A stretch of DNA of 64,000 nucleotides from the IMG/VR virus record IMGVR_UViG_3300049793_000366, positions 186,001 to 250,000 of that record; one strand, written 5' to 3'. Shown in pieces: positions 550-61,161 of the stretch. The position numbers were made by a program, and so were the translations under genes. The notes beneath the pieces were generated by a model. The model searched no databases. It worked only from the letters and a program-made list of their open reading frames with translations, and was not told where the DNA came from. Position 1 is the stretch's first letter, and every line of letters starts with the position of its first letter.

Positions 550-1638
550 ATGTCTAAATATATCAGAAGCTTCGAAAACCACAGACTTTCTTCAATAGAA
601 GATAGAGCTATTGATAAATTTATCAATGAAGGTTGGTTAGATGACCAAATGAAAACAGCATCAGCAGCTATAAAAGGATATTTGGGACAAATTACTGCTC
701 CTTTCAAGAGTGTTATTAAAGATATTAGAAAGGGTATGGATAATGAGAAGATAAAAACTTCATTATCAAACTCACTTGACAACGCATTTAAGAATGCTAA
801 TAAGTCAGTGGATGCTATTAAAGACGAAGCAGATTTAGCTAAGATTGTACCAGACTTTCAGGGTGTTGTTTCTCAATTAGCACAACAATTGGAGAAAGAG
901 ATAGCAACAGTAAAAGAATCTAAATTATTTGAAGCAAATGCTCAGGATTCATTAATTGGCGCGAAGGTTATACTTAATATGGTTACTGATAAAATGACCA
1001 AGTTGAAGCAAAATTTTGACCAGCAAGTTGCAAAGGCTAAAGATTTAGCTACTAAGAAAGCGGCTGTTAAGAAAGAGCTTAATAATATGTACACTCAATT
1101 ACAAAATGATATTAAGTCGATTGATATTGATGCACTGGTTAAGGAATATAAAGAGAAGAATAAGATAGAAGGAAATAAGAATGGTATAATTTTGGACTGG
1201 GGTGATGTTGAGATTACATTACAAAGTATGGAAGGTGAAACTAATCCATCTGGTCAGAAATTTGAAATTGGTTATTATAAAGTAGTTAAAACGGGGTCTA
1301 AGAAAATATTAGAAAATGACGTTGTTAAGATAACTGGTATTGTTAAGAAGGGTGATAAAGCTAAGTTTACCGAAGTACTAAGAGGTAACAAGCCATTTAA
1401 GATTGATAATAAAGACTTCTATGAAACTGGTAATATTGAAAGACTTGTAGTTGATGATAAAGAAGTTACGGAACATAACTTTGGTGGTGAGAATCAAGAT
1501 CCAAACTCTGACTTGAAATCTAAATTAGCGAAGATTAAAGGTGATGCTGATAAAATGGATGTAGTTAATAATTTAGTTGATAATCTTGACAATCCTGATA
1601 AGATGAAACAAGTCGCAGAAATTTTAGATAAAGGATAA
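550..1638 (+). CDS. Hypothetical helical protein with capsid-targeting-like N-terminus (probable virion/internal protein)
   Basis: 362 aa ORF starting MSKYIRSFENH; late motif upstream. Confidence 0.6.
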   Translation: MSKYIRSFENHRLSSIEDRAIDKFINEGWLDDQMKTASAAIKGYLGQITAPFKSVIKDIRKGMDNEKIKTSLSNSLDNAFKNANKSVDAIKDEADLAKIVPDFQGVVSQLAQQLEKEIATVKESKLFEANAQDSLIGAKVILNMVTDKMTKLKQNFDQQVAKAKDLATKKAAVKKELNNMYTQLQNDIKSIDIDALVKEYKEKNKIEGNKNGIILDWGDVEITLQSMEGETNPSGQKFEIGYYKVVKTGSKKILENDVVKITGIVKKGDKAKFTEVLRGNKPFKIDNKDFYETGNIERLVVDDKEVTEHNFGGENQDPNSDLKSKLAKIKGDADKMDVVNNLVDNLDNPDKMKQVAEILDKG

Positions 1639-1898
1639 TGATTAAGCAAATTAAAAAAGTAATTAGTGAGCTTGAATTGAAATCAAATGAAAGCTTTAGT
1701 GCCTTTTCTGACTACATTGAGAATATGAGAGAGAAGGGTAATTTTGAATTACTTAACAACGCTGTTTCGCGTAAGTTTGGATTTGACTATTATAGTTATA
1801 AAGGTATAACTATTGCTGACTATAAGAAAATTGTTTATAATGGATTTAAGAATAATGGTAGACTTGGTATAGAATCCGTTATTAGAAAAGCTATTTAA
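1638..1898 (+). CDS. Hypothetical protein
   Basis: 86 aa ORF coupled to the upstream gene (TAATG). Confidence 0.6.
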   Translation: MIKQIKKVISELELKSNESFSAFSDYIENMREKGNFELLNNAVSRKFGFDYYSYKGITIADYKKIVYNGFKNNGRLGIESVIRKAI

Positions 1899-2659
1899 TA
1901 CCAAGAGTGTTCCGGATTCTCTTCGAATATAGAATCTAAATAATTCTCAATAACACTACTCATATCTTTTGTTTTATACATTTCAGCAGGACCTTCTGGT
2001 CCTATGTGTACTAAGTAACATGAATCTACATTAATACCGTATTGCTTAAGAATAACTTTATATAAATGTAATTGTATTGAGTATTCGGTTTGATGGTTTT
2101 TGTAGAAGTTATCAAATGGTGTTAGTAAATTTTCAGATTTACCCCAATCTGAATCATCTGTTGTGAATTTCTTATTTGTCTTCCAATCTAAAATAAATAT
2201 CTTATCGTTGTAGATGAATATAGAATCTATCATACCAGCTATTCTCCATTTTCTTGAGAATATTCTTTGTTCAAATATAACTGGTGTTAGTTTGTGTAAC
2301 TTCTGTGCATATAGAATATTGAATTTATTTATTCTCGATGTCACATCTAAATTACTTGGAAGTGGTTGCCAAATTTGGTTGAAATAATTCTCAATCCAGT
2401 TGTGTGTAGCAGTACCTAATTCATTCGCATAATCATTCAGCTTTCTCCATTGTTCTAAGATAAATTCTTGAGGAACACCTTGCTCGTCTGCTTTTACTTT
2501 TGACCAATGGTCTGTTTCGAATGGTTTGTGAAATTTAGAAATAAGCTGAGTTACTGAAATAAATCGCTTACCCTTGTATGTATATTTGTGATATACAGGG
2601 TCGAATTTGAAATCAGGATCGTCAAAAACCTCAAGCTTTTTTATAATGTCATTCTTCAC
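1895..2659 (-). CDS. PD-(D/E)XK (RecB-like) exonuclease
   Basis: GTATHNWIE...EQRIF...AGMIDSI...ILDWKT...QLHLY motifs; no Fe-S cysteine cluster. Confidence 0.85.
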   Translation of the reverse strand: MKNDIIKKLEVFDDPDFKFDPVYHKYTYKGKRFISVTQLISKFHKPFETDHWSKVKADEQGVPQEFILEQWRKLNDYANELGTATHNWIENYFNQIWQPLPSNLDVTSRINKFNILYAQKLHKLTPVIFEQRIFSRKWRIAGMIDSIFIYNDKIFILDWKTNKKFTTDDSDWGKSENLLTPFDNFYKNHQTEYSIQLHLYKVILKQYGINVDSCYLVHIGPEGPAEMYKTKDMSSVIENYLDSIFEENPEHSWY

Positions 2660-2716
2660 TAAAATGATATTATAAAAAAGTCAAAAAGTTTATTTAATCC
2701 GTTGATTTTTAGGTGA

Positions 2717-3049
2717 TTATTTACCTAAAGTGTCAATTTTGGCTGAATCTTTAACGAGTAATGAATCTTTAGGTAGAAAAATAGCTTTGAAGGGCTTTTT
2801 CTCTGGTTGTGGAGGTGGTAAGTAGAGTGTGTCGTGTTTCACCACCTCTTTGGGTGGTAAGTTTGTCATAACAGCTACTATTGAATCCAGTTGCTTTATT
2901 CTTATATCCTTTGCCGCTGATTCATTTGTTTTTCGAAACAAGAAGAAACTAAGTAGTGATATTGTTATTATAATTGCGATGCATACGAATAAAAAAATAC
3001 CTACTGTCCCTTCGTGTCTTCTGTGATAATTCTGGTGGTTGCTTCTCAT
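2717..3049 (-). CDS. Hypothetical membrane-anchored protein
   Basis: N-terminal hydrophobic segment GIFLFVCIAIIITISLLSFFLF followed by a Pro-rich tail. Confidence 0.65.
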   Translation of the reverse strand: MRSNHQNYHRRHEGTVGIFLFVCIAIIITISLLSFFLFRKTNESAAKDIRIKQLDSIVAVMTNLPPKEVVKHDTLYLPPPQPEKKPFKAIFLPKDSLLVKDSAKIDTLGK

Positions 3050-3357
3050 TTTTTGCGTTTATAGTACTTGTTATAGTGAGGGTTCGGGAATAGCTTAAGA
3101 TGTAACCAAATTCTGAATTTAGAAATTTTAGCCATTAACTTAGCCCATGTCCATTTTTCAATCTTATTTGGTGTAGGCTTTTCTTTCTCACCTAAGATGA
3201 AGTCGATTTTACCAACGATTTCTTCGTCTACTGGTATTTCGTCTCCATCTTTTAGAAGATTTCTAAGCCTATCAAATGGTGCAAGTCTTTGGTCGTCTGG
3301 GTTATGCTCATAGTCGTGATATAAACCCTTATACATTTTTTCTGTTTCCTTGTCCAT
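3046..3357 (-). CDS. Hypothetical protein
   Basis: 103 aa ORF directly downstream of a host-type promoter; ATGA overlap with the next gene. Confidence 0.6.
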   Translation of the reverse strand: MDKETEKMYKGLYHDYEHNPDDQRLAPFDRLRNLLKDGDEIPVDEEIVGKIDFILGEKEKPTPNKIEKWTWAKLMAKISKFRIWLHLKLFPNPHYNKYYKRKK

Positions 3358-4605: not shown

Positions 4606-4614
4606 TAATATATA
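4606..4614 (+). promoter_or_regulatory. Putative late promoter TAATATATA
   Basis: Exact motif 5 nt upstream of ATG 4620. Confidence 0.6.
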
Positions 4615-4619: not shown

Positions 4620-5909
4620 ATGATTAAAAAATTTGAAGATTATAGCTCATTTCCAAGTGAACCAAGAAAGGAACTTGTTTATTATAGTTTCGACTGGGAT
4701 GATAATATTCTACATATGAATACAGTCATACATATGGAAAAGCTTGTTGGTAGTGAATGGACGCCAGTTGATATATCGACTGAAGAGTTCGCTAAGATAA
4801 GAGGTGATAGAGATAATTATAAATTATATAACGAGAATGCTGAAAGTGCTTTCTGTGAATTTTGTGATAGAGGACCTCGTGGTTCGAGTGCTTTCTTAGA
4901 AGATGTTAAAGATTCTGTTAAGAATGGTGGCTTTGCGCCATCGTGGTCTAAGTTTATAGATTGTATAGTTTCTGGCTCTTTATTTGCAATCATCACGGCT
5001 CGTGGACACGAACCAAATTCTATAAAAGAAGCAGTTAGATGGATTATTGAAACACAACTAACAACTGAACAACAGAGTAAATTGGTTAGTAATTTATTAG
5101 CTTTTCATAAAGAATTTAATAACGAACCAAAGGAACAAATAATTGAAGATTATTTAGATTTGAATTTTTATTTTGGTGTATCATCGAATACATTTATAAA
5201 TCGTTTTGAATCTGAGTTAAATGTAGCTGATACAGCTATGAATCCAGAAAAGGCTAAAGAAGTAGCTTTGAAGTTTTTCATTGAGAAAACACACGCTTAT
5301 GGTAAAATGATTAATGCTAAAGTTAAGATAGGATTCTCTGATGATGATATTAAAAATGTTGAACATATTGAAGAATTAATGAAAGGCGAACTTTCGTTGA
5401 AATACCCATTATCTACACTAAGAATATATGATACTTCTGAGCGTGGTTATAGAAAAATAAAAATAGAAGAGTCTATGGACGAAAGTATTAATCCTAATTA
5501 TGAATTCTTTGTTGTATATAGCAATGAACGAATTGTATCTGGTTGGGAATCCGAAGAAAGTGCTTGGGATGACTATAATAAGCGAGTTGAGAAAAATATG
5601 GATATGGAAAATTCCCTATCGGTGTATAGTGTAGAAGAGTGTGATGAGAATGGACTTGATCCATTTGATTGTGATAATTGGATAAGTGAGGGTGATAATT
5701 TCTTTGAATTTAGTGAAGAAGGAAATGATGAAGAAATCATGGAAAAAAAGAAGTTTAAAAAAGCAACAAAAGCTACTGAGTCTCAGACTGGTGCGGCTAT
5801 TGATTTGAAAGATGCTTTACCTAAAGAAGATATGGGTTGTGATAAGGATGATGCTGTTACTGAGTCTAAATCTCGCTTAAAAACATTTAAAACATTTTCT
5901 AAAAAATAA
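4620..5909 (+). CDS. HAD-superfamily hydrolase-like protein with acidic C-terminal extension and capsid-targeting-like termini
   Basis: FDWDDNI (motif I DxD), ITARGH (motif II), GFSDDD (motif IV); begins MIKKFEDY, ends SRLKTFKTFSKK. Confidence 0.65.
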   Translation: MIKKFEDYSSFPSEPRKELVYYSFDWDDNILHMNTVIHMEKLVGSEWTPVDISTEEFAKIRGDRDNYKLYNENAESAFCEFCDRGPRGSSAFLEDVKDSVKNGGFAPSWSKFIDCIVSGSLFAIITARGHEPNSIKEAVRWIIETQLTTEQQSKLVSNLLAFHKEFNNEPKEQIIEDYLDLNFYFGVSSNTFINRFESELNVADTAMNPEKAKEVALKFFIEKTHAYGKMINAKVKIGFSDDDIKNVEHIEELMKGELSLKYPLSTLRIYDTSERGYRKIKIEESMDESINPNYEFFVVYSNERIVSGWESEESAWDDYNKRVEKNMDMENSLSVYSVEECDENGLDPFDCDNWISEGDNFFEFSEEGNDEEIMEKKKFKKATKATESQTGAAIDLKDALPKEDMGCDKDDAVTESKSRLKTFKTFSKK

Positions 5910-7957: not shown

Positions 7958-8383
7958 ATGCCAATAAAAATGTTTCAGGAGTTTTCTAACGAATCGGTGA
8001 ATAATATAATAAGCTTCAAATTGCTTGATATTGAACCAATTGAAAAAAGATTATCGGATCTTAAAACTTCTAATATTGACTATACAATAACGCCTGCTAT
8101 CTATAACTATTATCAAGGAAAACTGATATCTGTTAAGAGGATTAATCCTAAATTTAGCATGGTTGATAATCTAAGAGCGATACGAAAGAATGCTGTTGGT
8201 GAGATTTCACCAGGATTCAGAATTGATATTAAGATACCAGATTCTACAAAGGATAATACGTGGTTGTTTGATAAATTAGCATCAATTGAACAAGATTTAT
8301 CACCAGTATTTAGGTTTGATTCTAAGCAAGACCATGAGGGATATCATGTGGATTTTATATATAAAACAAAAGAAAAACTTTGA
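7958..8383 (+). CDS. Hypothetical protein with capsid-targeting-like N-terminus
   Basis: Starts MPIKMFQEFSNES. Confidence 0.6.
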   Translation: MPIKMFQEFSNESVNNIISFKLLDIEPIEKRLSDLKTSNIDYTITPAIYNYYQGKLISVKRINPKFSMVDNLRAIRKNAVGEISPGFRIDIKIPDSTKDNTWLFDKLASIEQDLSPVFRFDSKQDHEGYHVDFIYKTKEKL

Positions 8384-48341: not shown

Positions 48342-48755
48342 ATGAACACGGAATCAGAAGTTAATTACTTTTTCGCTCTGAAACTTTCTAAAATTTTTGA
48401 AAGAGAAGACGAGTTTAAAATGCTCAAGTGCTTATATTATAGCTACAAGGACAAAATTATAGAATCTGACTTTTTCAACAAAAAGGTTGATGAAATGAAG
48501 ATTTCTATTATCAAAACAGGAAATCAAGAAGTAGGTACGATTATGCATAGCTTGTTTAAGAATTATAGTAAACAAGACGCTACTAATATACTTATCTTAC
48601 TTTCTGTGATAGAGAACGCAGTTAATCACGAGAACTACGAGGTAGCAAACAAAGCAAAGCAAGAAATTCTTAACGTTAAAGGTTTAACCGAAGCTGAGTA
48701 TTTCAAGATGTTCAAATGTTTTGTTACTGATTGCCCTGTGAAATACGACTTCTAA
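48342..48755 (+). CDS. Hypothetical protein with UVR-like C-terminal hairpin
   Basis: AVNHENYEVANKAKQEI; ATG at 48342. Confidence 0.55.
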   Translation: MNTESEVNYFFALKLSKIFEREDEFKMLKCLYYSYKDKIIESDFFNKKVDEMKISIIKTGNQEVGTIMHSLFKNYSKQDATNILILLSVIENAVNHENYEVANKAKQEILNVKGLTEAEYFKMFKCFVTDCPVKYDF

Positions 48756-51038: not shown

Positions 51039-51314
51039 ATGATTAAAAAATATAATGAATTCAATCATCACAGCGATGAAATTTCAAACGAGTCTATAAA
51101 GAATTTTTCAGATTTTGAATCAAATGATTCTATCACTGAAGATGCTGAATATTATATTTCCAAAAATGGTGAAGAGATACAAGTTACTAAACACGACTTC
51201 ATTAAATTGGGTGCTGATAACAATTTTCAACCTAAGTTGAACGGTGAGAAAGGCTTCTCAATAAAGAAGAGTGACAACAAGATTGTAGCAAAGATAGATG
51301 AATCGAAAGATTAA
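51039..51314 (+). CDS. Small protein with duplicated capsid-targeting-like motif
   Basis: MIKKYNEFN...ESIKNFSDFES; AATATATA at 51013-51020. Confidence 0.6.
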   Translation: MIKKYNEFNHHSDEISNESIKNFSDFESNDSITEDAEYYISKNGEEIQVTKHDFIKLGADNNFQPKLNGEKGFSIKKSDNKIVAKIDESKD

Positions 51315-51882: not shown

Positions 51883-53385
51883 ATGTCATCACCACTGGGT
51901 TTAACTACATTTACGACTGGCTCTGCTAACGCAAACAACACGACTAATACAACTGCGACTGCATCGCAATCACAGCAAGCCCAGGGTCAAAATAACCAAC
52001 AGTCTGGTTATAATTACAATTCGTATGATTTTAAGAAATATTCATCTGCTCCTAATGTTAGAAATAGAGCAAAGAAATCTATATTTTCAAGTAACACTGC
52101 ATTCACGACTAAGTTCGAACACAGCAACGACACATACGATATCAGAACTAATTCAATTATAAAATATTGCAATAACCCAAGAACTCCTGCTATGAAATTA
52201 AAAGCAGAAGATTTCGCGTATTTAAGAAATCTTGGTGTTTACTCAAATAACCGTTTAGTTGTTGTTAGAAGATTTCCAGCTCCGGTTGGTAACGATTTAA
52301 CTATAATAAAGGCTACTCCTATATCTACATTGATTTCATGGGTTCCTGATAATGAGAAAAACTTTCTAAGCGTATCGTTTGGTGAAGAATGGACTAATGC
52401 TAAGGCATCATTAAAAGATTTATTAAACGATGTTGGTAATGATTTATCAAGTCCTGAGAATAGAACTGGTGGCGGTGGTAAGGGCTTAGGTAATATGCTT
52501 GCGGGTGGTTTAAATGCCTTACCATTACCGGGTTTTATGGAAGGTGTTCAATTAAGAATTTTAAATAAATTAGGGTATACCGAGAATGATGCGAATTCAA
52601 TTCCATCTGGTAACCCAAATATTATAAAGAGTGCTAAGGTTAGAAAAACTTTAGATAAAGATGCTGAGGGTTCTGGTCTTAAATGTAAAATATCAATTGA
52701 TTTTGAAACTGAATATGAACAGAAGTTTATAGACGGTGTTGACCCGACTCTTGTATATCTTGATGTATTATCAACTGTATTGAGATTTGGAACATCTGAA
52801 TCTAAATTCATTATTAATACTAAATTACAATCACAGGGAGCAGACATTATAAACAAAATTAAAGCTGGTCAGTGGATAGAAGCAATCGAATTATTTGTTG
52901 GTGCGGCTATCGCGGCTATGAAAGAGATTGCGGCTGATTTAATATCAACCGTTGTAGAAGGTTCTAAAGCTGTTGCTAAGGAAGCAAGTAAAGGAGATTT
53001 AGAAGCAACTGTTAATGCAATATTTGATACGTTTTTGAAATCTGCGGCTAGTACGATAATTTCAAAATATAAAGTAAGACTTGGTGGTATCATGTCAGCA
53101 TTATCTGGTGAGCCATCTGCACCTTGGCACGTTACGATTGGTAACCCTAAGAAACCAGTTTTTAGCTCAGGTGATATGTTAGTAGAAGAAGTTAATGTTG
53201 ACTTGGGTAATATATTATCATTCAATGACCTTCCTTCTAATATTAAAATCAAATTTACACTTACTAATGCCAGACCATTGGGAGCGCAAGAAATATTCGA
53301 GCGATTCAATACTGGTGCTGGAAGAACATATGCGGCGAAGCCTAATAACTTCGAAGAGAGAGATATAAAAATAGAAAAGAAATAA
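51883..53385 (+). CDS. Putative baseplate / tail-tube initiator protein
   Basis: First gene of the operon containing gp53-like, hub and gp5-like genes; tube-fold-like C-terminal segment. Confidence 0.55.
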   Translation: MSSPLGLTTFTTGSANANNTTNTTATASQSQQAQGQNNQQSGYNYNSYDFKKYSSAPNVRNRAKKSIFSSNTAFTTKFEHSNDTYDIRTNSIIKYCNNPRTPAMKLKAEDFAYLRNLGVYSNNRLVVVRRFPAPVGNDLTIIKATPISTLISWVPDNEKNFLSVSFGEEWTNAKASLKDLLNDVGNDLSSPENRTGGGGKGLGNMLAGGLNALPLPGFMEGVQLRILNKLGYTENDANSIPSGNPNIIKSAKVRKTLDKDAEGSGLKCKISIDFETEYEQKFIDGVDPTLVYLDVLSTVLRFGTSESKFIINTKLQSQGADIINKIKAGQWIEAIELFVGAAIAAMKEIAADLISTVVEGSKAVAKEASKGDLEATVNAIFDTFLKSAASTIISKYKVRLGGIMSALSGEPSAPWHVTIGNPKKPVFSSGDMLVEEVNVDLGNILSFNDLPSNIKIKFTLTNARPLGAQEIFERFNTGAGRTYAAKPNNFEERDIKIEKK

Positions 53386-53867
53386 TGAACTTTAAATCAT
53401 TGGATAATCTCAAGAGAGATGACGTTACTAAGTTATACGACTTAACAAAAGCAACATTTATTAATCCAAGTGAAGCTTTGTCTATCCCTATTTTTGAATT
53501 TGTTGTAGAAGAACATTTTGCTGGTAGAATTGATTTAATTTGTAATGAATTATATGAGACTCTTGACTACGTTGAGTTCTTATTGAGGTTTAATGATATA
53601 GACCATCCATTGAATATACCTAAGGATAGGTCAATATTTTATGTTGAGAAGGAATCTGTTTCTTTATTTGATTATACTGATATTGAAGTGGAAGCTAAAG
53701 ATGCAATCAAGCGTTTATCGAATAATAATAAGCGTCAGAGAATTGACAAGAAACGTGAGGCCGCGATTAATAATCCAACCTTACCACCTACTATATCTGA
53801 TGACGTAACGGATCCTGTACAAATAAGAGGTAATCAAATTATCATCGGAGAAAATTTATTTAGATAA
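53385..53867 (+). CDS. gp53-like baseplate wedge (LysM-like) protein
   Basis: GRIDLIC.ELY.....VE.LL.FN.I..P..I. Confidence 0.75.
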   Translation: MNFKSLDNLKRDDVTKLYDLTKATFINPSEALSIPIFEFVVEEHFAGRIDLICNELYETLDYVEFLLRFNDIDHPLNIPKDRSIFYVEKESVSLFDYTDIEVEAKDAIKRLSNNNKRQRIDKKREAAINNPTLPPTISDDVTDPVQIRGNQIIIGENLFR

Positions 53868-56800
53868 TGGCTAACATTAAAGAAACTGTATTTAAGAGTG
53901 TCGCTGATATAGATACGTTCTTTAAAAAGTACGAATCTAACGGGTTTACTGATTGGTTTAATAAAAATCATGGTGGTAAAAATGGCTTCGCTGCTCAGGG
54001 TAATCGTTCTTCAAAGAAGATTACTGCTCCTGATAAATGGACTCAAGTATGGGGTCATATTAAAGATATATTCAATAGGGATTCTGTTAACTTAGTAGAG
54101 TTCTTAGCAATTAATACAATTATAATTAACGAAACTGGTGGGTCATTTAAACCATTATCAGAGGGTGTTAATAAAAACTCTGCGTCATCACATCCAGGTG
54201 TTGCTTATGCCTTTGATGCTATTTCTGGTTTAAAGAAATCTTATAACTCTTTAGGTGGTTTAAATAAAACAGCCTATGAATTATATCGCGATGCTGACTT
54301 TAAAGCCGCGCATGGTCACAAACCGTATGGTAATATTCTAAAAGATACAACTGATGTTAGATGGAAGTCTGATACATTTCCAATTGGTTTTAGTGGTGGT
54401 TCGGTAGAGAAAGAGGTAGATAGAGATTTGCTAAGTAATACATTCGTAGGTGAGGCGGATTTTCAGAAATTCAGAGGTCGTGGTTTTATACAAACTACTG
54501 GACGTGGTAACTACAAAAAGATTATAGAGTATATAACTACATATAGTGGTACTAATAAAACTATTTTAAGTTACAAGAGTAAATGGTCTCAACACGGTAC
54601 TAACTATGATAAGATTGCTACGATAAGTACCAATAAGGATTGGGATGACCTATTCATAAATAGTGATTCTATTATTCCTTGTTATGCTGTTTATGTACAT
54701 GGTAAAGCTGGTGGGTATTTAACAATAAGTGTTTCGAATGACAATCAGGTAAAATCGGGAGTTAGAAAAGTAGCGAGTAAAATTGCTGGTGCTAATGCTA
54801 AAGATTATATTGATTTATTTGAACAAAGAGTTTTGCAACAATTGAATGCTATTGATAGTTCATCACCAGCTCCAACTGCGGCAACTGCTTCTCCTGCGGC
54901 AACTCCGGCACCTGCGAGTACTGCTGATACGTTCAATACGAATGGTGAAGATCCAGAAGAATCGTGGTATAAATTCCTTGAAGATACTGGTAGAGAAGAG
55001 ATATCTGATAATAGCTCTAATAATAACAACAACGGAAATAATAACAATAATTCTGGTGAACAAAAGGATAGTGGTAGTCAAGGTTCAATTGAGAATGTAA
55101 TGAAGCCTACTATCAAGATTGACCCAATTACTCTTGAAGTACAAGGCTCAACTACTACAAAAACTGATGTAGCTGGTAATCTTGGATTCTTCCCGTTTGT
55201 TTGGTATAATGGTATTCAAATCCAATATGCCGACATAACATCTTTCAATTTAACATCGAGTAGTTTACTACCAACTGTTTCTGTTACATTCTTTGACTCA
55301 ACTGGTCTTATGGATGAGGCTGGATTTCCGTTAGATGATACAAAGTTGAAAGTGTTTTTAAATCCGAGAAAGCCAGGATTTAAGCCAATCTTAATTGAAT
55401 TTAAAATATCTAACTTCGCTATAACTAGTAACAAAACATATGTTATTGAAGGTGTAATGAATGTTAATAAATTCTATTTAAAGAAATATGAAGCATATAC
55501 TAATATGTCATCGTATGATGCTTTAGTAGAGTTTTGTAAGAGAGCTGAAATTGGATTTAATTCTAATGTTAGAAGTACTGATGATAGAATGAACTGGATT
55601 TCAGTTGGTGAGTCAGGATTTGATTTTGTAAATAGTATAATTGATTACTCATATGTATCTGATGATGGATTCATGTGGGGATTCGTAGATTTTTATTATT
55701 GCTTTAATTATATTGATATTGAAACTGAATTTAAGAGACAAATTGATTCAATAGAAGGATTGGATGGTTCTGGTGGATTACATCAAGGATTACAATCTAC
55801 TGTACCAAGTGATACACAGAAGTTATTTTTAACTAATGATAAAGCATTATCTGATTCAAGTAACTATTTCTATAATCATACTATTATGAATAACTCAACA
55901 GCTATTTCACTTAGAAAGGGTTATTTAAATACTGTTAAGTTTTACGATAGAAACGCAAAAGATTTCATGGTATTCGATATCGATTCTATTACATCCGAAG
56001 GTGATAAGACTATTATTATGAAAGGTTCTCCACAAGATGAAGAATATTTTAAAGAGCATACTACATCAACTTTGATGGGTAAGTTAGACCAGGATAATAT
56101 GCATAAAAACTATCACTATGCTTGGGTTCAGAATTCTCATAATATTGAGGATTTAACGAAGATTGGTGTTAAGTTACAATTGCCAAATCCTAACTTCAAC
56201 TTATATAGATTTCAAAAAATAAATGTTGTGATATCAAATCACACACAGAAGTTTGCAAAAGAATTAGTGAACTATCGTCTGAGTGGTGCTTGGTTAATAA
56301 CTGATATATCATTCATTTTTACAAATGGACAATTTAAGCAAGAGGTTACTCTTGTTAAGAGAGAATTAGGATTAAGCCCAGAAGAGGTTAAGAATGAGGG
56401 TGCTTCATCAGCAGCTAATAATTCACCAGCTCCTTCTAACGCGAGTCCTGCTGATGGTGGTTCTAATGGATTAGAAGGTGTTAACTTTGATGATCCAGCT
56501 CCGGGTGCTACTCAATCTGATTTAGTATTTACGCCTGAGGGGCCTGCTTATGAATCAGCTACGGCTTCTGCTACGGCTTCTAATCCACCAGCGGCTACCG
56601 CATCTGGCACAGCTTCTACACAAGCGGCTACGGCTTCTGCTACTCCTGCGGCTGTTGAGTTCAATGTTAAGTATGTTGACCAATTTACTGCGGTGCTTAC
56701 TTTAAGTGATGATGCTTATCGTTTAGCTTTTGTTGATTATACATTCAATGATAGTACTGGTAGTGGTGATAGTTCGTTATATACGTATTCAACACCGAAG

Positions 56801-56986
56801 AAGGAGAATAAGTGGACATTTGAATTAGCTGACTTCTATGCGAATGGTGTATTGGATAAAGATGCTAAGGATGGTGTTCTTAAATTAAACTTCATAGCGA
56901 AGAAAGTTGCAACTGATGGTAAAACTTTCTTATCAAGTGGAGATGTTCAGAAGAATAATGTTATTTCTTTTAAATATACTAAGTAA
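53867..56986 (+). CDS. Baseplate hub-like protein with N-terminal GH19 muramidase domain
   Basis: I.NETGG.F and FRGRGFIQTTGRGNY (GH19 signature); central gp27-like region; S/A/T/P linkers; position between gp53-like and gp5-like genes. Confidence 0.7.
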   Translation: MANIKETVFKSVADIDTFFKKYESNGFTDWFNKNHGGKNGFAAQGNRSSKKITAPDKWTQVWGHIKDIFNRDSVNLVEFLAINTIIINETGGSFKPLSEGVNKNSASSHPGVAYAFDAISGLKKSYNSLGGLNKTAYELYRDADFKAAHGHKPYGNILKDTTDVRWKSDTFPIGFSGGSVEKEVDRDLLSNTFVGEADFQKFRGRGFIQTTGRGNYKKIIEYITTYSGTNKTILSYKSKWSQHGTNYDKIATISTNKDWDDLFINSDSIIPCYAVYVHGKAGGYLTISVSNDNQVKSGVRKVASKIAGANAKDYIDLFEQRVLQQLNAIDSSSPAPTAATASPAATPAPASTADTFNTNGEDPEESWYKFLEDTGREEISDNSSNNNNNGNNNNNSGEQKDSGSQGSIENVMKPTIKIDPITLEVQGSTTTKTDVAGNLGFFPFVWYNGIQIQYADITSFNLTSSSLLPTVSVTFFDSTGLMDEAGFPLDDTKLKVFLNPRKPGFKPILIEFKISNFAITSNKTYVIEGVMNVNKFYLKKYEAYTNMSSYDALVEFCKRAEIGFNSNVRSTDDRMNWISVGESGFDFVNSIIDYSYVSDDGFMWGFVDFYYCFNYIDIETEFKRQIDSIEGLDGSGGLHQGLQSTVPSDTQKLFLTNDKALSDSSNYFYNHTIMNNSTAISLRKGYLNTVKFYDRNAKDFMVFDIDSITSEGDKTIIMKGSPQDEEYFKEHTTSTLMGKLDQDNMHKNYHYAWVQNSHNIEDLTKIGVKLQLPNPNFNLYRFQKINVVISNHTQKFAKELVNYRLSGAWLITDISFIFTNGQFKQEVTLVKRELGLSPEEVKNEGASSAANNSPAPSNASPADGGSNGLEGVNFDDPAPGATQSDLVFTPEGPAYESATASATASNPPAATASGTASTQAATASATPAAVEFNVKYVDQFTAVLTLSDDAYRLAFVDYTFNDSTGSGDSSLYTYSTPKKENKWTFELADFYANGVLDKDAKDGVLKLNFIAKKVATDGKTFLSSGDVQKNNVISFKYTK

Positions 56987-56997
56987 CAACACTCAAT

Positions 56998-57006
56998 TAA
57001 TATATA
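56998..57006 (+). promoter_or_regulatory. Putative late promoter TAATATATA
   Basis: Exact motif 4 nt upstream of ATG 57011. Confidence 0.6.
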
Positions 57007-57010
57007 GTTA

Positions 57011-58699
57011 ATGGCATTAGATAACATCATAGGTAACATTCCTTTTTTCAATCAGGACAAGACTGGTCAGCAATCTACTGAGAAGAGAAGCGAGTATTTG
57101 GAAAATAAAACAAATCCAGAACATCGTGGTTTAGCTAATATAGAAGATTTCTATTTTAATCCTGATATACACAAGGAAGACGATAATAGAAGTATCATTG
57201 GTCACATATATGATAGAATTGATAAGAGTGCAACGCCATTATCATCGTCTATAACAGACGCTAAAACTAAAGACCAATCTTATAGAGATACTATTACTCA
57301 AGTCTTTAAAGATAAGAAAACTGAGTATTTCAAATACGGTATTTATATCGATGATAGTACTCACAACGAAGACCCAACTGTTTTGGGTTTTGACTTAGTT
57401 ATAGATGTTAATAATTCTCCGCTATTTACAGAGCTACCAGAGTTCTTTAAAGCATTTGCTAATATAGATGAAGTAAACAATAGGAAAGACGTTTATACGC
57501 AATTTTTAGAAGAATTGGGTAGATATTTTGAAACTGGTATTCCGGGTTCAAATTCTGAGTTCTCATCATTCAAAGCTCACTATATTAAGTCTGTATCTGG
57601 TTTAGATTTACTCGGAGAGAGTATAAGTGGTGGTTCATTTGATGAGGCTGGTAAAAAACAATTTACCGATTATGGTAAAGATTTACTAAAGGTAAACTTA
57701 TATGAAGATGTTACATTGAGTACATCACACTTAGCATTATTGTATAAAACATTAATGTGGTCAAAGATTAGTGGTAGATTAGTTATACCTGAGAATTTAT
57801 TAAGATTTGATATGTATGTTCAGATTTCCGAAATAAGAAATTTCAACGCTGTTAAGAAGTCATTAGATGGTGATAACGGTGGTGAGATGTTAGAAGTTGT
57901 TAGAGCTAATGTATCGAGATATGTTTATAAATTATATGACTGTCAATTATACTTTGATAAGTTACCACATGGTGACCAAATATCAATTGCTGAATCTAAG
58001 GCTATCGATGGTTTTGATTTTCAAATTAAATATAAATTCTCTACTGTTCAATTTGAAAGATTCATGCAACAGAATGATGTAATTAATAGAAGTATTGGTT
58101 CTGGTCCAAACGACCTTACGAGTAGAACAACAGATTGGGAAACATATTTAACGTCTCAACGAAAGTATATTACGAATGAGGATTTATTCCCATTGTCTGT
58201 TAATATATCAGGTTATGATGATTCAAGTGGTACGTCATCAAGTGGTGACCCTAATATGGGTAATAAAGCTGAGTATTTAATTAGAAGAAGACCAGTTGAA
58301 CCACAAGCATACTATCAATATACTGGTCAGGATAAAAAAGTTCCTGAGGCAGAAAAACAAGGTAGTGCGGCAGAAGTTGAGAAGAATACTTTTGGTGATA
58401 AGCTAAAAGATGCAGTTAGTGATTCTGTTGGTAATAGTATTGAGAGTTTGAAAAAATCAGCAATGAATTTAGCAAAACAAAAGGCAAACGAATTGATTGG
58501 TTTAGTTAATTCAACTCTTGGTAAAGTGCTATCAAATGCTGGTCTTGGTAAGGGTATCTACGACCCAAGTAACGTTTATGATAAACAAGGACCTCTTGAG
58601 AAATTAGTTAAATCTGAATTTAGAAAGTTTGGTAACTCTACTCTTAACTCAGTATTGGGTGTGGGTCAAAACGAGTTGAAAAATTTATTTAAGAGATAA
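57011..58699 (+). CDS. Putative baseplate / tube-junction structural protein
   Basis: 562 aa gene within the baseplate operon. Confidence 0.55.
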   Translation: MALDNIIGNIPFFNQDKTGQQSTEKRSEYLENKTNPEHRGLANIEDFYFNPDIHKEDDNRSIIGHIYDRIDKSATPLSSSITDAKTKDQSYRDTITQVFKDKKTEYFKYGIYIDDSTHNEDPTVLGFDLVIDVNNSPLFTELPEFFKAFANIDEVNNRKDVYTQFLEELGRYFETGIPGSNSEFSSFKAHYIKSVSGLDLLGESISGGSFDEAGKKQFTDYGKDLLKVNLYEDVTLSTSHLALLYKTLMWSKISGRLVIPENLLRFDMYVQISEIRNFNAVKKSLDGDNGGEMLEVVRANVSRYVYKLYDCQLYFDKLPHGDQISIAESKAIDGFDFQIKYKFSTVQFERFMQQNDVINRSIGSGPNDLTSRTTDWETYLTSQRKYITNEDLFPLSVNISGYDDSSGTSSSGDPNMGNKAEYLIRRRPVEPQAYYQYTGQDKKVPEAEKQGSAAEVEKNTFGDKLKDAVSDSVGNSIESLKKSAMNLAKQKANELIGLVNSTLGKVLSNAGLGKGIYDPSNVYDKQGPLEKLVKSEFRKFGNSTLNSVLGVGQNELKNLFKR

Positions 58700-60273
58700 T
58701 GACAAATCGCGATGATTTGAAGAATAGAACTTTTATTGCCATTGTTGAAGATAACGAAGATCCTAAAAAGATAGGTCGTATTAGAGCAAGGGTATTGGAT
58801 GTATTTGATGAGATTCCTGCTGACCAAATACCTTGGGCATCGCCTTGGAAGGACTTAAACGGTAACTCATTCAATATTCCAGACAAAGGTAAAGTTGTAA
58901 CTGTTATTTTCGAAGATGGTAATATTTACTCACCTGAGTATATCTATGCTGACCACTATAATATAAATTTAGCGACTAAGTTAAATGAATTGAGTGGTGC
59001 GAATTATACTTCGATGAAGTCTATAATTTTTGACCACAAGACACAATTATATGTTAATGATAAAGAAGGATTGAAGTTTGACTATAAGTTCAATAATATA
59101 AATATTAAAGATACTGAGATTAATATTAACTTAAAAGATAACTTTTCTAAGGTAAATATTGGTACAGCTATCGCTTCACAGAGAGCAATCTTAGGTGACC
59201 ACTTTTTAAATTGGTTTGATGATTTCGTAGATAACTTATTGGGTTCTAATGCGGGTCCATACTTGGGAAACCTTGGTGCGCCAGTAGTTGCTAACCCTAC
59301 ATTCATTAATTGTCTTTTAAAATACAAAGCTCTTAAAGAGCCTAAGTTTCTATCACATCATATTAATTTGGTAGATAATGAAGACGTTGAGAAGCTTGAC
59401 CGTGTTTGTAATTCACAAATTGGTGATAAGTGGAAATCAACCGTTCGTAAGAATGATTTAGTTTCTAAAGAACCAGTTAAGTATAAACCAAAAGCTGGTC
59501 AATCAACAGATCCGGCATCTGGTGAGGTTACACCACCTACTGATGATAATGGTAATCCAGTACAAACACAACCAAATACAGCCGCACAGAGTCAACCAGA
59601 AGTTGAGCCGAGTGTACATGATGATATCAATAAGATATTTGAGGCTATGAAGGCTAAGGGTTATAAGATATTGGATAGACCATATGAAATAAACATAGTT
59701 GGTATTCGTAGACAATATGAAGGTATGGCTTACTCAAACTCATATATGGATTCTCTATATGCTATCTATAAAGATGATTCTGGTAACTGGGCTAAATCTA
59801 CATACCCTATTTCTACAATTCCTGGTTTGAGTATTAAAGATCCACAGACTAAGAAAATGGAATCTCTTAAGAAGTATAAGAAAGATAAGGCTACTAATTC
59901 ATTGGTAGCAAGAAGACCATTCATCGGTACTTTACAAGAAGCACAATATCTTGACGTATTCTATATTGGTGAGCATTTGGATTCACCAGCGATGAAAACT
60001 AAAGGTAAACAAAAAGCATATCGTGATGAGAACTTATCTGAGAATGTAATCACTTATACGAGTAAGAATAATGAAGGTAACTTTGGTATGTTAATTCATA
60101 AGGGTTATGTTAAAGGTACATCAAGTGCGGTTAATAACTGGTCAGAAGGTTGTCAGGTATTCAGAGATGAAGCACATTTAACACATTTCTTCGACCTATG
60201 TAATAAGCACAAAGCTAAGTATGGTAATACTTTCAACTATACATTGATGCTTGCTAAGGATGTTAATCTATAA
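58699..60273 (+). CDS. gp5-like central spike (OB-fold) fused to a YkuD/L,D-transpeptidase-like domain
   Basis: DP...GRIRARV...IPWASP...IP..G..V.V.FEDG...P.Y; C-terminal NIVGIR...ST.PG...IHKG...WSEGCQVF. Confidence 0.8.
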   Translation: MTNRDDLKNRTFIAIVEDNEDPKKIGRIRARVLDVFDEIPADQIPWASPWKDLNGNSFNIPDKGKVVTVIFEDGNIYSPEYIYADHYNINLATKLNELSGANYTSMKSIIFDHKTQLYVNDKEGLKFDYKFNNINIKDTEININLKDNFSKVNIGTAIASQRAILGDHFLNWFDDFVDNLLGSNAGPYLGNLGAPVVANPTFINCLLKYKALKEPKFLSHHINLVDNEDVEKLDRVCNSQIGDKWKSTVRKNDLVSKEPVKYKPKAGQSTDPASGEVTPPTDDNGNPVQTQPNTAAQSQPEVEPSVHDDINKIFEAMKAKGYKILDRPYEINIVGIRRQYEGMAYSNSYMDSLYAIYKDDSGNWAKSTYPISTIPGLSIKDPQTKKMESLKKYKKDKATNSLVARRPFIGTLQEAQYLDVFYIGEHLDSPAMKTKGKQKAYRDENLSENVITYTSKNNEGNFGMLIHKGYVKGTSSAVNNWSEGCQVFRDEAHLTHFFDLCNKHKAKYGNTFNYTLMLAKDVNL

Positions 60274-60798
60274 GTAATCAACGTAGAACGGGTAACCTCT
60301 AATTGGCTTTTCTTTTATTCCCCTGCTTCTTGCGCTTGCTCCTACATAATCCTTCGGATTGTATATTGCTATGTGAAAACTTATTTTATCTTTAATTGAT
60401 TGTGGAAGTGCATTCAAGTAATCAGCCAAATCTTCTATACTTGTTGGTAATTCTTTAGTACTACCACCGCCTTTATTTGTAAGATTTGTTACTCTCGCTT
60501 GTGCTATTAATCCGATATCTCTGTGCATACCATTAAACCTTTTAATGGCTTGATGTGCTAACTTTGATACCTCTTCGAATTTATCAGTATTGGTTACACA
60601 TTCTATATCTACGCTATTTACTTCTTCTGTTGCTTTATCTGTCTTGTATCGATGACCAAGTGATTTAAAGCTGTAATAATCTAACTCTTCTAATAGTGAA
60701 GAGAATACATATTCTAACTCTTTTTTAGTCAATTCCAATGCTGAATAAGCAATCTTTGGTTCTGAGAGATAATCTTTGAACTTCTTAAGTAACTTCAT
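60268..60798 (-). CDS. Hypothetical protein with capsid-targeting-like N-terminus
   Basis: MKLLKKFKDYLSE. Confidence 0.6.
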   Translation of the reverse strand: MKLLKKFKDYLSEPKIAYSALELTKKELEYVFSSLLEELDYYSFKSLGHRYKTDKATEEVNSVDIECVTNTDKFEEVSKLAHQAIKRFNGMHRDIGLIAQARVTNLTNKGGGSTKELPTSIEDLADYLNALPQSIKDKISFHIAIYNPKDYVGASARSRGIKEKPIRGYPFYVDYL

Positions 60799-60803
60799 AT
60801 AAA

Positions 60804-60812
60804 TATATATTA
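60804..60812 (-). promoter_or_regulatory. Putative late promoter TAATATATA
   Basis: Exact motif upstream of ATG 60798. Confidence 0.6.
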
Positions 60813-60861
60813 AAAAGTGTGTTTAAAAATTTTATATATACTATACAAAAATATAAACACT

Positions 60862-61161
60862 ATGAAACACTTAAAAACATTTGAACACTTTACATTTGAA
60901 GGAAGTGTTGAACTAGAAAACTCTATTTCTGAAAAGAAGAAACTTCCAGAAGCTCTTCAAAAGGCTATTGACGCTAAGAAAGACAAAGCTGATAAGAAGG
61001 ATGATGATAAAGAAGAAAAGGACACTGATAAATCTAAGAAGTCTAAAAAAGACGATAAGGATGATAAAGACGAAAAAACTGAGACAAAAGGTTTAACTGC
61101 CGCTCAGAAAAAGTTACCTGCTGGTCTACAAAAGGCAATAGCAGCTAAGAAGAAGAAATAA
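60862..61161 (+). CDS. Lys/Asp-rich small protein with capsid-targeting-like N-terminus and internal repeat (start revised to ATG 60862)
   Basis: MKHLKTFEHF; KKLPEALQKAIDAKK and KKLPAGLQKAIAAKK. Confidence 0.65.
   Translation: MKHLKTFEHFTFEGSVELENSISEKKKLPEALQKAIDAKKDKADKKDDDKEEKDTDKSKKSKKDDKDDKDEKTETKGLTAAQKKLPAGLQKAIAAKKKK

What the first reader, a model, noticed from the sequence alone, without database searches (positions are those of the whole stretch)
550..61161. About 14 unrelated proteins share a T4 capsid-targeting-like N-terminal leader
Seen: MSKYIRSFEN (550), MIKKFEDY (4620), MPIKMFQEFSNES (7958), MRYIKLFEDFES (15763), MKRFTDKLNEN (20053), MKKFTQVREE (24183), MRIKNFSEFSINED (32404), MKHIKRFEN (32994), MRLKKFNELF (46412), MKNIQKFEKFNES (46678), MSKKKIYNFLSFINEE (49587), MIKKYNEFN (51039), MKLLKKFKDYLSE (60798), MKHLKTFEHFTFE (60862). 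Established: T4 internal proteins IPII/IPIII carry a 10-residue capsid-targeting sequence (MKTYQEFIAE), IPI begins MKTFKEF, and the gp21 prohead protease cuts after (I/L)-x-E. Many leaders here end in INE, LNE, FNE or LSE. Inference: this phage packages a large, dispersed cargo of proteins into the head, including enzymes, for delivery at infection. Fourteen in 64 kb far exceeds the handful known in T4.
Basis: partly seen in the sequence, partly recalled or inferred. Interest (0 to 1): 0.85.

Follow-up and report, generated by a model that had tools for sequence, protein, structure and literature searches.

The report
T4-like cargo leaders in a megaphage
About one gene in six of this ~712-kb soil megaphage starts with the same ~12-residue tag, which closely matches the peptide phage T4 uses to load proteins into its head; this suggests, but does not prove, that these giant phages pre-pack a very large and varied protein cargo for delivery into the host.

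Summary
All 14 peptides are ORF starts, on proteins otherwise unrelated to each other. A model trained only on a related 642-kb megaphage flags 13-14 of 84 window genes (controls 1/283 and 0/142). In T4 the same model ranks IPII, IPIII and IPI among its top six ORFs. In the relative, 161 of 940 genes (17%) carry the leader, as do 20% of genes in 80 IMG/VR loci. It is absent from AT-rich PA5oct and from a Lak-A1 sample, so base composition does not explain it. Conservation is at the amino-acid level.

Relatives have a T4-type portal, a gp23-like capsid protein and a gp21-type protease with aligned His and Ser, fused to a repeat domain dense in [IL]-x-E sites. Leader genes sit almost only behind the promoter-like motif TTAATATATA, which precedes head and tail genes. 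Shell and tail proteins never carry the leader. Orthologues gain or lose it as a module, together with the promoter class.

The T4-type capsid-targeting reading is therefore the best explanation (about 0.55), but no virion proteomics exists. The cleavage register is unresolved, and the window's own head genes lie outside it.

The parts
550..1638 (+). Leader-bearing gene, 362 aa, no known domain. Leader MSKYIRSFEN... (nt 550-600). Late-type motif at 512-520.
4620..5909 (+). Leader-bearing gene, 429 aa. Leader MIKKFEDY... (nt 4620-4661). Late-type motif at 4606-4614, 14 nt before the ATG. The LR756502 orthologue keeps a leader-like start (MDILRFDQFIRE).
7958..8383 (+). Leader-bearing gene, 141 aa, orphan. 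Leader MPIKMFQEFSNE (nt 7958-7993). Late-type motif at 7925-7933. Weaker match (10.5 and 5.0 bits).
15763..15954 (+). Leader-bearing gene, 63 aa, orphan. Leader MRYIKLFEDFE (nt 15763-15795). Late-type motif at 15750-15757, 13 nt before the ATG.
20053..20559 (+). Leader-bearing gene, 168 aa (phrog_13623, function unknown). Short T4-register leader MKRFTDKLNE (nt 20053-20082). The orthologue starts MIKFSNMINE. No late-type motif found upstream.
24183..24410 (+). Leader-bearing gene, 75 aa. Short-register leader MKKFTQVRE (nt 24183-24209). Late-type motif at 24155-24163. The orthologue LR_278038 scores 16.7 bits.
32404..32994 (+). Leader-bearing gene, 196 aa, member of a conserved family of 343 proteins. 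Leader MRIKNFSEFSINE (nt 32404-32442). Late-type motif at 32373-32381. I-x-E is invariant across 120 orthologues. In the AF2 model residues 1-20 are a flexible extension.
32994..33407 (+). Leader-bearing gene, 137 aa, with a weak DnaJ-type Zn-finger match. Leader MKHIKRFEN... It has no motif of its own and starts at the stop codon of the 32404 gene, so it is probably co-transcribed.
45999..46412 (-). Leader-bearing gene, 137 aa, orphan. Leader MRLKKFNELFDTE (nt 46374-46412). It lies directly downstream of the 46415-46678 gene, so it is probably co-transcribed. An alternative upstream ATG at 46436 is unlikely.
46415..46678 (-). Leader-bearing gene, 87 aa, orphan. Leader MKNIQKFEKFNE (nt 46643-46678), the best match in the window (23 bits). 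Late-type motif at 46683-46691.
48724..49587 (-). Leader-bearing SAM-dependent methyltransferase, 287 aa. Leader MSKKKIYNFLSFINE (nt 49543-49587). Late-type motif at 49592-49600. The family of 115 keeps [WYF]-x-L-F-L-E-E, with Glu15 in 115/115.
51039..51314 (+). Leader-bearing gene, 91 aa, orphan, with an acidic low-complexity linker. Leader MIKKYNEFN... (nt 51039-51080). Late-type motif at 51013-51020.
60268..60798 (-). Leader-bearing gene, 176 aa, orphan, next to the gp5-type hub gene. Leader MKLLKKFKDYLSE (nt 60760-60798). Late-type motif at 60804-60812.
60862..61161 (+). Leader-bearing gene, 99 aa, orphan. Leader MKHLKTFEHFTFE (nt 60862-60900). Variant motif TATATATA at 60833-60840.
51883..60273 (+). 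Tail and baseplate-type late genes without a leader: 51883, 53385, 53867, 57011 and the gp5-type OB-fold hub at 58699. These serve as the contrast class. Late-type motifs precede 51883 and 57011.

Best explanation
The shared N-terminus is a T4-type capsid-targeting propeptide that this megaphage lineage has expanded enormously.

Proposed mechanism:
1. Accessory proteins are made together with the virion proteins, from the same late-type promoter (TTAATATATA).
2. Their first ~10-13 residues, M-K-[HY]-[LI]-K-x-[YF]-x-x-F followed by acidic residues, form a flexible amphipathic tag.
3. The tag binds the prohead core. In this clade the core is a gp21-type protease fused to a repeat-rich scaffold domain.
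4. After shell assembly the protease removes the tag by cutting after a nearby Glu, often in hydrophobic-x-Glu.
5. The mature proteins stay in the head and enter the next host with the DNA.

Shown: the motif, its N-terminal specificity, its equivalence to the T4 CTS pattern, amino-acid-level selection, modular gain and loss, a T4-type head module and protease in relatives, and co-occurrence with the promoter-like motif of structural genes.

Inferred: binding to the core, cleavage, packaging and delivery.
For: 1. Same sequence pattern as the T4 CTS. A PSSM built only from LR756502 N-termini ranks T4 IPII first, IPIII third and IPI sixth of 566 T4 ORFs. The iterated model gives 4 hits in 252 T4 genes, and three of them are the IPs. 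T4 N-termini were read from the record. One conserved family has [FY]-x-[DE]-F-I-x-E, against T4 Y-Q-E-F-I-A-E, with Glu in 120/120 and Ile in 107/120.

2. Homologous head machinery in relatives. Portal_T4 scores 1.3e-57. The capsid protein aligns full-length with gp23 (score 106 vs 42+-5.7 for shuffles). The protease domain aligns with gp21 (hhalign E=1.9e-5), with invariant H72 and S128 on gp21 H85 and S140. It matches 733 phage records annotated as head maturation protease. Its C-terminal half has ten 14-residue repeats, each with Y-[IL]-A-E. Site density there is 6.8-7.4 per 100 aa, against 1.8 proteome-wide and 7.8 in T4 gp22.

3. Co-expression with virion genes. The motif precedes portal in 66/67, protease in 75/77 and MCP in 61/61 relatives. 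It is absent before gp32, gp41, gp43, DnaK and ThyA. Leader genes lie in late-type units in 134/161 cases and in host-type units in 5/161; in the window the split is 12/14 versus 0/14.

4. The tag marks cargo-like proteins, not shell proteins. It occurs on 0 of 205 portal, protease and MCP orthologues. Its carriers are soluble (TM helices in 6/161 vs 112/779), unrelated to each other (101 families in 106), and are enzymes or orphans.

5. The tag is a separable module. Eight families have leaderless members that start where the leader ends. In the pre-portal gene the leader co-varies with promoter class: 19/19 late-type with the leader, 8/9 host-type without it.

6. Selection acts on amino acids. 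Synonymous codon usage at conserved positions equals genome usage.

7. The AF2 model shows residues 1-20 as a low-confidence extension ahead of the fold.

8. Composition is not the cause. The leader is absent from PA5oct (33.8% GC), Lak-A1 (24.7% GC) and LR756508.
Against: - No virion proteome, N-terminal sequencing or expression data exist for this uncultured clade, and no RNA run was listed.
- The window's own head genes were not seen.
- Seventeen to twenty per cent of all genes is far more cargo species than in any known phage.
- Only 46% (LR756502) or 27% (IMG/VR loci) of leaders have [ILVM]-x-E with the Glu at residues 9-16, so the cleavage register is not defined.
- The gp23 cleavage tripeptide is not conserved at the aligned position of the megaphage capsid protein.
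- A few carriers have TM helices or are enzymes such as HNH, exonuclease or PPK2, for which packaging has no obvious use.
- The bodies are acidic, whereas from my own knowledge T4 IPs are basic.
- The scaffold repeats rank only in the top 0.2% against the leader model.
- T4 IP genes have sigma70-type promoters upstream, so the late-promoter link is not a T4 trait.
- The Pfam S77 hit on the LR756502 protein itself is below the gathering score (20.2 vs 27 bits).
Confidence: 0.55

Rival explanations
1. The leader is a protein-level tag on late accessory proteins with some other purpose. It might recruit them to an assembly or replication site, hand them to the phage-encoded Hsp70 system, or control their stability. 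They would not be packaged into the head.
For: - The tag is tied to the late-type promoter class.
- The phage encodes DnaK, and one leader protein has a DnaJ-like zinc finger.
- Many carriers are ordinary cytoplasmic enzymes.
- The very large number of carriers is easier to accept for a cytoplasmic tag.
Against: - It does not explain why the pattern equals the T4 CTS, down to F-I-x-E.
- It does not explain why the tag is missing from every shell and tail protein made from the same promoters.
- It does not explain why leaderless orthologues switch to a host-type promoter.
- DnaK carries no late-type motif.
Confidence: 0.2
2. The conserved start is an expression element. On near-leaderless late mRNAs the first ~10 codons, or the nascent peptide, are constrained for transcription start or translation initiation, perhaps with the phage-encoded ribosomal protein bS21.
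For: - In about half of the cases the promoter-like motif begins only 10-14 nt before the ATG. Leader genes favour this spacing (42/55 vs 83/139, p=0.03).
- The phage encodes bS21.
- The H/Y alternation at residue 3 is also a YAY nucleotide pattern.
Against: - Synonymous codon usage at conserved positions matches genome-wide usage, and Leu uses four codons.
- Substitutions are conservative at the protein level (F/Y/W, I/L/V, K/R).
- Many late genes with the same 13-nt spacing lack the leader: window 14623, 19513, 31077 and 57011.
- Leader genes with 26-38-nt spacing are common.
- Structural proteins, which are presumably made in large amounts, do without it.
Confidence: 0.1
3. The leader is a hitch-hiker. 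A mobile cassette of promoter, ATG and first codons spread by recombination in front of newly acquired genes, much like the regulatory cassettes of T4-type phages, and the peptide has little function of its own.
For: - Promoter class and leader are gained and lost together.
- Leader genes form dense arrays of small orphan genes, each with its own motif. For example, 35 of 107 genes in the first 50 kb of LR756502 carry the leader.
Against: - The peptide is conserved within orthologous families whose bodies are only 41-77% identical. Glu is invariant in 120/120 and 115/115 members.
- Nucleotide-level identity is absent, since codons vary freely.
- The motif keeps a fixed register: the aromatic residue is at position 7 in 129/161.
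- A cassette origin would explain how the tag spread but not why it is kept.
Confidence: 0.1
4. It is a chance or compositional artefact of an AT-rich genome with Lys-rich N-termini.
For: The genome has 32.7% GC, and K, F, N, E and I are abundant.
Against: - Control rates are 0-0.4% (internal-Met windows and shadow ORFs), against 17% at true N-termini.
- PA5oct is similarly AT-rich and Lak-A1 more so, and both lack the motif.
Confidence: 0.01

Closest known systems
Capsid-targeting sequence (CTS) of phage T4 internal proteins IPI, IPII and IPIII (Mullaney and Black 1996; reviewed in PMC3012670, PMC9958956, PMC5694885)
   Same: - A tag of about 10-13 residues at the extreme N-terminus of otherwise unrelated, non-essential small proteins.
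- The same residue pattern: basic, then aromatic-x-[E]-F-[I]-x-E. The megaphage model recognises the T4 tags.
- The same kind of head module: T4-type portal, gp23-like capsid protein and gp21-type Glu-directed protease.
- The tag is absent from shell and tail proteins.
   Different: - Scale: 14 in 64 kb and 161 of 940 genes, against 3 (perhaps 4) in all of T4.
- An extra MK[HY] prefix puts the first aromatic at residue 7 rather than 4.
- Carriers include many enzymes and are acidic.
- The genes are tied to a late-type promoter, whereas T4 IP genes have sigma70-type promoters upstream.
- The protease is fused to a repeat scaffold domain, and no separate gp22 homologue was found.
- No experimental evidence exists here.
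Propeptide-bearing ejection and inner-body proteins of phiKZ-like giant phages (SPN3US, 201phi2-1, phiKZ; PMC5694885, PMC7411985)
   Same: - Large virions with about 50 head proteins and a large mass of ejected proteins.
- N-terminal propeptides are thought to target proteins to the prohead and are removed by a gp21-related protease that cuts after Glu.
   Different: - Those propeptides are mostly 80-160 residues long and are not a shared short tag.
- Their motif is A/S/G-x-E.
- There are far fewer species.
- It is a different phage lineage.
Encapsulin cargo-loading peptides (own knowledge)
   Same: A short conserved peptide appended to unrelated enzymes directs them into an HK97-fold protein shell.
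   Different: The peptide is usually C-terminal. It binds the shell protein itself, is not removed by a protease, belongs to a cellular compartment, and is not delivered anywhere.
Mobile promoter cassettes (PeSL) that flank orphan genes in T4-type phages (own knowledge, Arbiol et al. 2010)
   Same: Promoter-containing modules recur in front of many small, fast-evolving accessory genes and appear to move as units.
   Different: Those are non-coding early promoters with stem-loops. Here the recurring unit includes a coding leader under amino-acid-level selection and a late-type motif.

Membership tests
T4-type capsid-targeting propeptide system | A short (10-20 residue) tag at the extreme N-terminus, starting at Met1 | tested here: met
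   The motif is anchored to Met1: the aromatic residue is at position 7 in 129/161 carriers. Internal-Met windows match in 6/2974 cases.
T4-type capsid-targeting propeptide system | Sequence pattern of the T4 CTS (MKT[YF]xEF..E) | tested here: met
   A model trained on the megaphage alone ranks IPII, IPIII and IPI at 1, 3 and 6 of 566 T4 ORFs. The iterated model gives 3 IPs among 4 hits in 252 T4 genes.
T4-type capsid-targeting propeptide system | The tag is shared by otherwise unrelated proteins and absent from shell and tail proteins | tested here: met
   14 families in 14 window carriers and 101 in 106 megaphage carriers. The tag is on 0/67 portal, 0/77 protease and 0/61 MCP orthologues.
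T4-type capsid-targeting propeptide system | A hydrophobic-x-Glu protease site at the end of the tag | tested here: inconclusive
   [ILVM]-x-E with the Glu at residues 9-16 occurs in 46% of leaders vs 16% of other N-termini in LR756502, but only 27% vs 18% in the IMG/VR loci. It is invariant in two families. The cleavage register is not defined.
T4-type capsid-targeting propeptide system | A gp21-family (S77) prohead protease in the genome | tested here: met
   Met in relatives. hhalign to gp21 gives E=1.9e-5 with His and Ser aligned; some homologues carry PF03420; 733 phage records match. The Pfam score on LR756502 itself is sub-threshold. The window's own genome could not be checked because the gene lies outside the window.
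T4-type capsid-targeting propeptide system | A scaffolding core (gp22-like) that receives the tag and is degraded by the protease | tested here: inconclusive
   No gp22 homologue was found. The protease carries a C-terminal repeat domain with gp22-like density of [ILVM]-x-E sites. Its similarity to the leader is only modest.
T4-type capsid-targeting propeptide system | Tagged proteins are physically in the head and the tag is removed | not testable with these tools
   The clade is uncultured and has no proteomic data. The virion proteome of PA5oct could not serve as a proxy because PA5oct lacks the leader.
Sec, Tat or lipoprotein signal peptide | A hydrophobic core of 7 or more residues after a basic N-region | tested here: not met
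   The leader alternates basic and aromatic residues and is followed by acidic residues. Carriers are depleted in hydrophobic segments (6/161 vs 112/779).
Single paralogous gene family | Similarity extends beyond the N-terminus | tested here: not met
   Bodies are unrelated by blastp at 1e-4, and Pfam domains differ from protein to protein.
Nucleotide-level start-region element | Conservation of bases rather than residues | tested here: not met
   Codon choice at conserved positions equals genome-wide synonymous usage.

The most novel reading that the evidence does not exclude
Environmental megaphages of the >630-kb Mahaphage subclade use one universal T4-like address tag to load well over a hundred different accessory proteins into the capsid. 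These make up 17-20% of the proteome and include methyltransferases, RNA ligase, NUDIX, DHH and 2H phosphoesterases, acetyltransferases and many orphans. The phages would then inject this pre-made starter kit with the DNA. For a given protein, packaging (late promoter plus tag) and early transcription (host-type promoter, no tag) would be interchangeable evolutionary solutions. The tag would let the injected proteome be read directly from metagenomic sequence.
Probability: 0.4. Interest if true: 0.9.

Novelty: new variant of a known kind. Interest (0 to 1): 0.8.

Why it matters
If the tag works as in T4, it gives the first sequence-only way to read the set of virion-delivered proteins of uncultured giant phages. 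It would also imply a cargo an order of magnitude more diverse than in any characterised phage. That would change how we think megaphages start an infection and counter host defences. It would turn hundreds of orphan genes into candidates for injected effectors. It would also offer a portable packaging tag for a very large capsid. The co-variation of tag and promoter class suggests a simple evolutionary switch between "make it early" and "bring it along".

Tried and rejected
- Megablast of a 6.4-kb tail region against phage records found nothing; the genome is not in that collection.
- Pfam and PHROGs on the 14 window proteins left most as orphans.
- Direct phmmer of the protease and capsid candidates against the PDB, and a profile of the protease domain against the PDB, gave no hits.
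- Foldseek of the AF2 model of the 32404 family against the PDB gave no meaningful match; all TM-scores were below 0.35.
- I tested whether the scaffold repeats are the best internal matches to the leader model. They rank only in the top 0.2%, so I dropped this as strong evidence.
- RNA runs to map transcript starts: none was listed, and only one soil DNA run holds the sequence. I therefore did not use read laying.
- The homologue search for the methyltransferase returned only within-clade sequences, so it gave no leaderless cellular outgroup.
- PA5oct was tried as an experimental bridge because its record flags MS-detected virion proteins. It has no leader.
- Lak-A1 showed no expansion in 40 kb.
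- T4 IP genes were checked for late promoters and none lies within 90 nt, so I make no claim of a shared late-promoter trait.
- Literature searches for a CTS in megaphages or jumbo phages found no prior description.

Full report
**What the window is.** The window has 32.7% GC. Its Hsp70 gene is most similar to uncultured phage genomes of 635-735 kb: LR745206 and LR756502 at about 75% and LR756501 at 65%. Al-Shayeb et al. place these in the Mahaphage clade with predicted Bacteroidetes hosts (PMC7162821). One window protein is encoded on a JGI metagenome contig of 711,805 bp, Ga0497410_0000003. The only run that holds the sequence is a soil metagenome. The window carries a T4-type gp32, a gp5-type hub, ThyA, DHFR, FolD, RNase H, an RNB exoribonuclease, Hsp70 and ribosomal protein bS21.

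**Checking the observation.** All 14 peptides are at the stated coordinates and are ORF starts.
- A regex drawn from them hits 7 of 84 window genes, against 0.15 expected from the internal rate and 0 of 142 shadow ORFs.
- Because that regex was post hoc, I fetched the whole 642-kb LR756502 and applied it unchanged. It hit 59 of 940 genes against 2.3 expected.
- A position-specific model trained only on those 59, applied to the window, flags 13 of 84 genes, or 14 with the 46412 start. Controls give 1 of 283 internal-Met windows and 0 of 142 shadow ORFs.
- Without any seed, aromatic residues make up 25% and 19.5% of positions 7 and 10 across all 940 N-termini (background 11%). I/L/V/M make up 40% of position 4.
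- After iteration, 161 of 940 genes (17%) carry the leader, with control rates near 0.2%. The consensus is M-K-[HY]-[LI]-K-x-[YF]-x-x-F followed by E/S/N, with the first aromatic at residue 7 in 129 cases.
- The bodies are unrelated: 14 families in 14 window carriers and 101 in 106 megaphage carriers.

**Is it the T4 tag?** I read T4 from its record. IPII and IPIII begin MKTYQEFIAE and IPI begins MKTFKEF. The megaphage-trained model ranks IPII first, IPIII third and IPI sixth among 566 T4 ORFs; the uncharacterised gp61.1 (MKTFKEFIKE) comes second. The iterated model gives four hits in 252 T4 genes, three of them the IPs. In the 120-member family of the window protein at 32404, the start is M-K-[IV]-x-K-[FY]-x-[DE]-F-I-[NK]-E-E, with Glu in 120/120 and Ile in 107/120. 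This is almost T4's Y-Q-E-F-I-A-E. The methyltransferase family shows the same behaviour, with Glu15 in 115/115.

**Not composition and not nucleotides.**
- The leader is absent from 150 kb of PA5oct (33.8% GC, best score 5.2), from 40 kb of Lak-A1 (24.7% GC) and from 50 kb of LR756508.
- It is present in samples of LR745206, LR756501 and LR756504.
- It is also present in 184 of 901 non-seed genes of 80 IMG/VR loci.
- Codon choice at conserved positions equals genome-wide synonymous usage.

**The head machinery.** In LR756502, T4 gp20, gp17, gp18, gp25 and gp4 have homologues, and Portal_T4 scores 1.3e-57.
- The next large gene has a sub-threshold Peptidase_S77 hit. Its N-terminal 250 residues have 1654 close homologues, some with PF03420.
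- A profile of that domain aligns with gp21 at E=1.9e-5. Invariant His72 and Ser128 fall on gp21 His85 and Ser140.
- tblastn finds 733 phage records annotated as head maturation protease.
- The following gene aligns with gp23 over its full length (score 106 against 42+-5.7 for shuffles), but the gp23 cleavage tripeptide is not conserved at the aligned position.
- The protease's C-terminal half holds ten exactly 14-residue repeats, NLDKNIxYSEY[IL]AE. Its [ILVM]-x-E density is 6.8-7.4 per 100 residues, against 1.8 proteome-wide and 7.8 in T4 gp22. The repeats are conserved in 120 homologues. I read this as a protease-scaffold fusion built to be chopped after Glu.
- The repeats resemble the leader only modestly.

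**Expression context.** An upstream word, TTAATATATA, is 11-fold enriched before genes. It lies either 10-14 nt or 25-38 nt before the ATG.
- It precedes portal, protease, capsid, terminase, gp25, hub, baseplate and neck genes. It does not precede gp32, gp41, gp43, DnaK or ThyA.
- In 80 head loci of relatives it precedes portal in 66/67, protease in 75/77 and capsid in 61/61.
- A second word, TAnnTTTG, precedes other genes. From my own knowledge this is the Bacteroidota housekeeping -7 box.
- Leader genes carry the first motif in 78/161 cases against 116/779 (p=9e-19).
- By transcription unit, 134/161 leader genes are late-type and 5 are host-type. In the window 12/14 are late-type and none host-type.
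- No shell or tail protein carries the leader.
- T4's own IP genes have sigma70-type promoters upstream, so I treat late expression as logic in favour of packaging, not as a T4 trait.

**Modularity.** The 2H-phosphoesterase/Acb1-like gene has no leader in the window (44985-45506) but starts MIKKYLEFMKE in LR756502 on the same body. The gene just upstream of the portal starts MKHLRKFEEL[DN]-YSTY in 23 relatives and M[NK]-YSTY in 13. The former sit behind TTAATATATA and the latter behind TAnnTTTG. Eight families show both states. Pooled, leader-bearing members are late-type in 23/29 cases and host-type only in 0/29; leaderless members are 3/17 and 9/17. One family dominates these counts, so few independent events underlie them. 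In the AF2 model of the 32404 family, residues 1-20 are a low-confidence extension and the fold begins at residue 22.

**Who carries it.** Most carriers have no known domain. The rest are single examples of PPK2, T4-type RNA ligase, NUDIX, methyltransferases, SET, GNAT, HNH, RNase T, DHH, LigT/Acb1-like and PQ-loop. Carriers are depleted in TM helices (6/161 against 112/779) and are more acidic than other proteins. One copy of each would total about 3.4 MDa. That is small beside roughly 400 MDa of DNA (my arithmetic), and T4 carries about 1,000 IP molecules (PMC9958956). So capacity is not an obstacle.

**Mechanism and rivals.** The best reading is a T4-type targeting propeptide: made late, bound to the protease-scaffold core, trimmed after Glu, and retained for injection. 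The switch between "late promoter plus tag" and "host-type promoter without tag" in one gene fits a protein needed early that can either be brought along or made at once. That last point is inference. Three rivals remain open:
- a late-protein tag for another purpose;
- an expression element of near-leaderless mRNAs;
- a hitch-hiking cassette.

Each explains less. None accounts for the T4 equivalence together with the exclusion from structural proteins and the amino-acid-level conservation.

**Weak points.**
- There is no proteomic evidence.
- The cleavage register is undefined (46% and 27% canonical sites).
- The number of carriers is unprecedented.
- The window's own head genes were not seen.

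**Novelty.** I found no paper that links a capsid-targeting sequence to megaphages. The mechanism class is known from T4. Three things appear new: the scale, the extended form of the tag, and its coupling to a promoter class and to a protease-scaffold fusion.

Noticed in passing
window 4606-4614, 15750-15757, 46683-46691, 49592-49600, 57011 upstream and others; LR756502 genome-wide: A promoter-like word, TTAATATATA, precedes about 20% of genes and nearly all recognisable head and tail genes. In half of the cases it begins only 10-14 nt before the ATG, which implies leaderless or nearly leaderless late mRNAs.
   Followed up: yes
window upstream of 47578, 38369, 3357(-), 29050(-), 32307(-): TAnnTTTG boxes, which from my own knowledge are the Bacteroidota housekeeping -7 consensus, precede a different set of genes such as the metallophosphatase and the DHFR operon. 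These are probably host-RNA-polymerase early genes, and they support a Bacteroidota host.
   Followed up: partly
L005:25272-27368 (LR756502 225272-227371): The gp21-type prohead protease is fused to a long C-terminal domain. That domain has ten exact 14-residue repeats, NLDKNIxYSEY[IL]AE, conserved in 120 homologues. It looks like a built-in scaffold designed to be cut into 14-mers.
   Followed up: yes
L143-L222, gene just upstream of the portal (LR756502 222007-222480): This gene is polymorphic. 23 relatives have the leader plus the late-type motif. 13 relatives lack exactly the leader and have a host-type TAnnTTTG box instead.
   Followed up: yes
window 19513-19710: A ribosomal protein bS21 gene (Pfam 4.4e-13) sits 13 nt behind a late-type motif, so it would be made late.
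   Followed up: partly
window 16348-18213 and 32994-33407: A full-length Hsp70/DnaK (Pfam 2.5e-254) is encoded by the phage. One leader-bearing protein has a weak DnaJ-type CxxCxGxG zinc-finger match.
   Followed up: partly
window 44985-45506: A 2H-phosphoesterase with a near-threshold Acb1 (anti-CBASS) match. It is leaderless here, but the LR756502 orthologue carries the leader.
   Followed up: partly
L014:18966-19130 (T4 gene 61.1): The uncharacterised 54-aa T4 protein gp61.1 begins MKTFKEFIKE. It scores as high as IPII and IPIII on the leader model, so it may be an unrecognised CTS-bearing protein.
   Followed up: no
window 33938-35014: A SiaC-family domain (9.4e-28) is fused to a weak DnaB-like N-terminal segment, which is an unusual combination.
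   Followed up: no
window 31077-32042: A 321-aa protein with a classic hydrophobic signal peptide (MKRFIITLFISLISLVGFSQ) sits behind a late-type motif. Its start resembles the leader superficially but it is a different kind of N-terminus.
   Followed up: no
window 6845-7906, 24868-25755, 38761-39225, 29151-31040: The phage encodes thymidylate synthase, FolD and DHFR, plus an RNB-family exoribonuclease with S1 and cold-shock domains. None of these has the late-type motif.
   Followed up: partly
window 45999-46436: The start codon is ambiguous. The longest ORF starts at 46436 (MVKRKTIIMRLKKF...) and overlaps the upstream gene. The leader-consistent start is 46412.
   Followed up: partly
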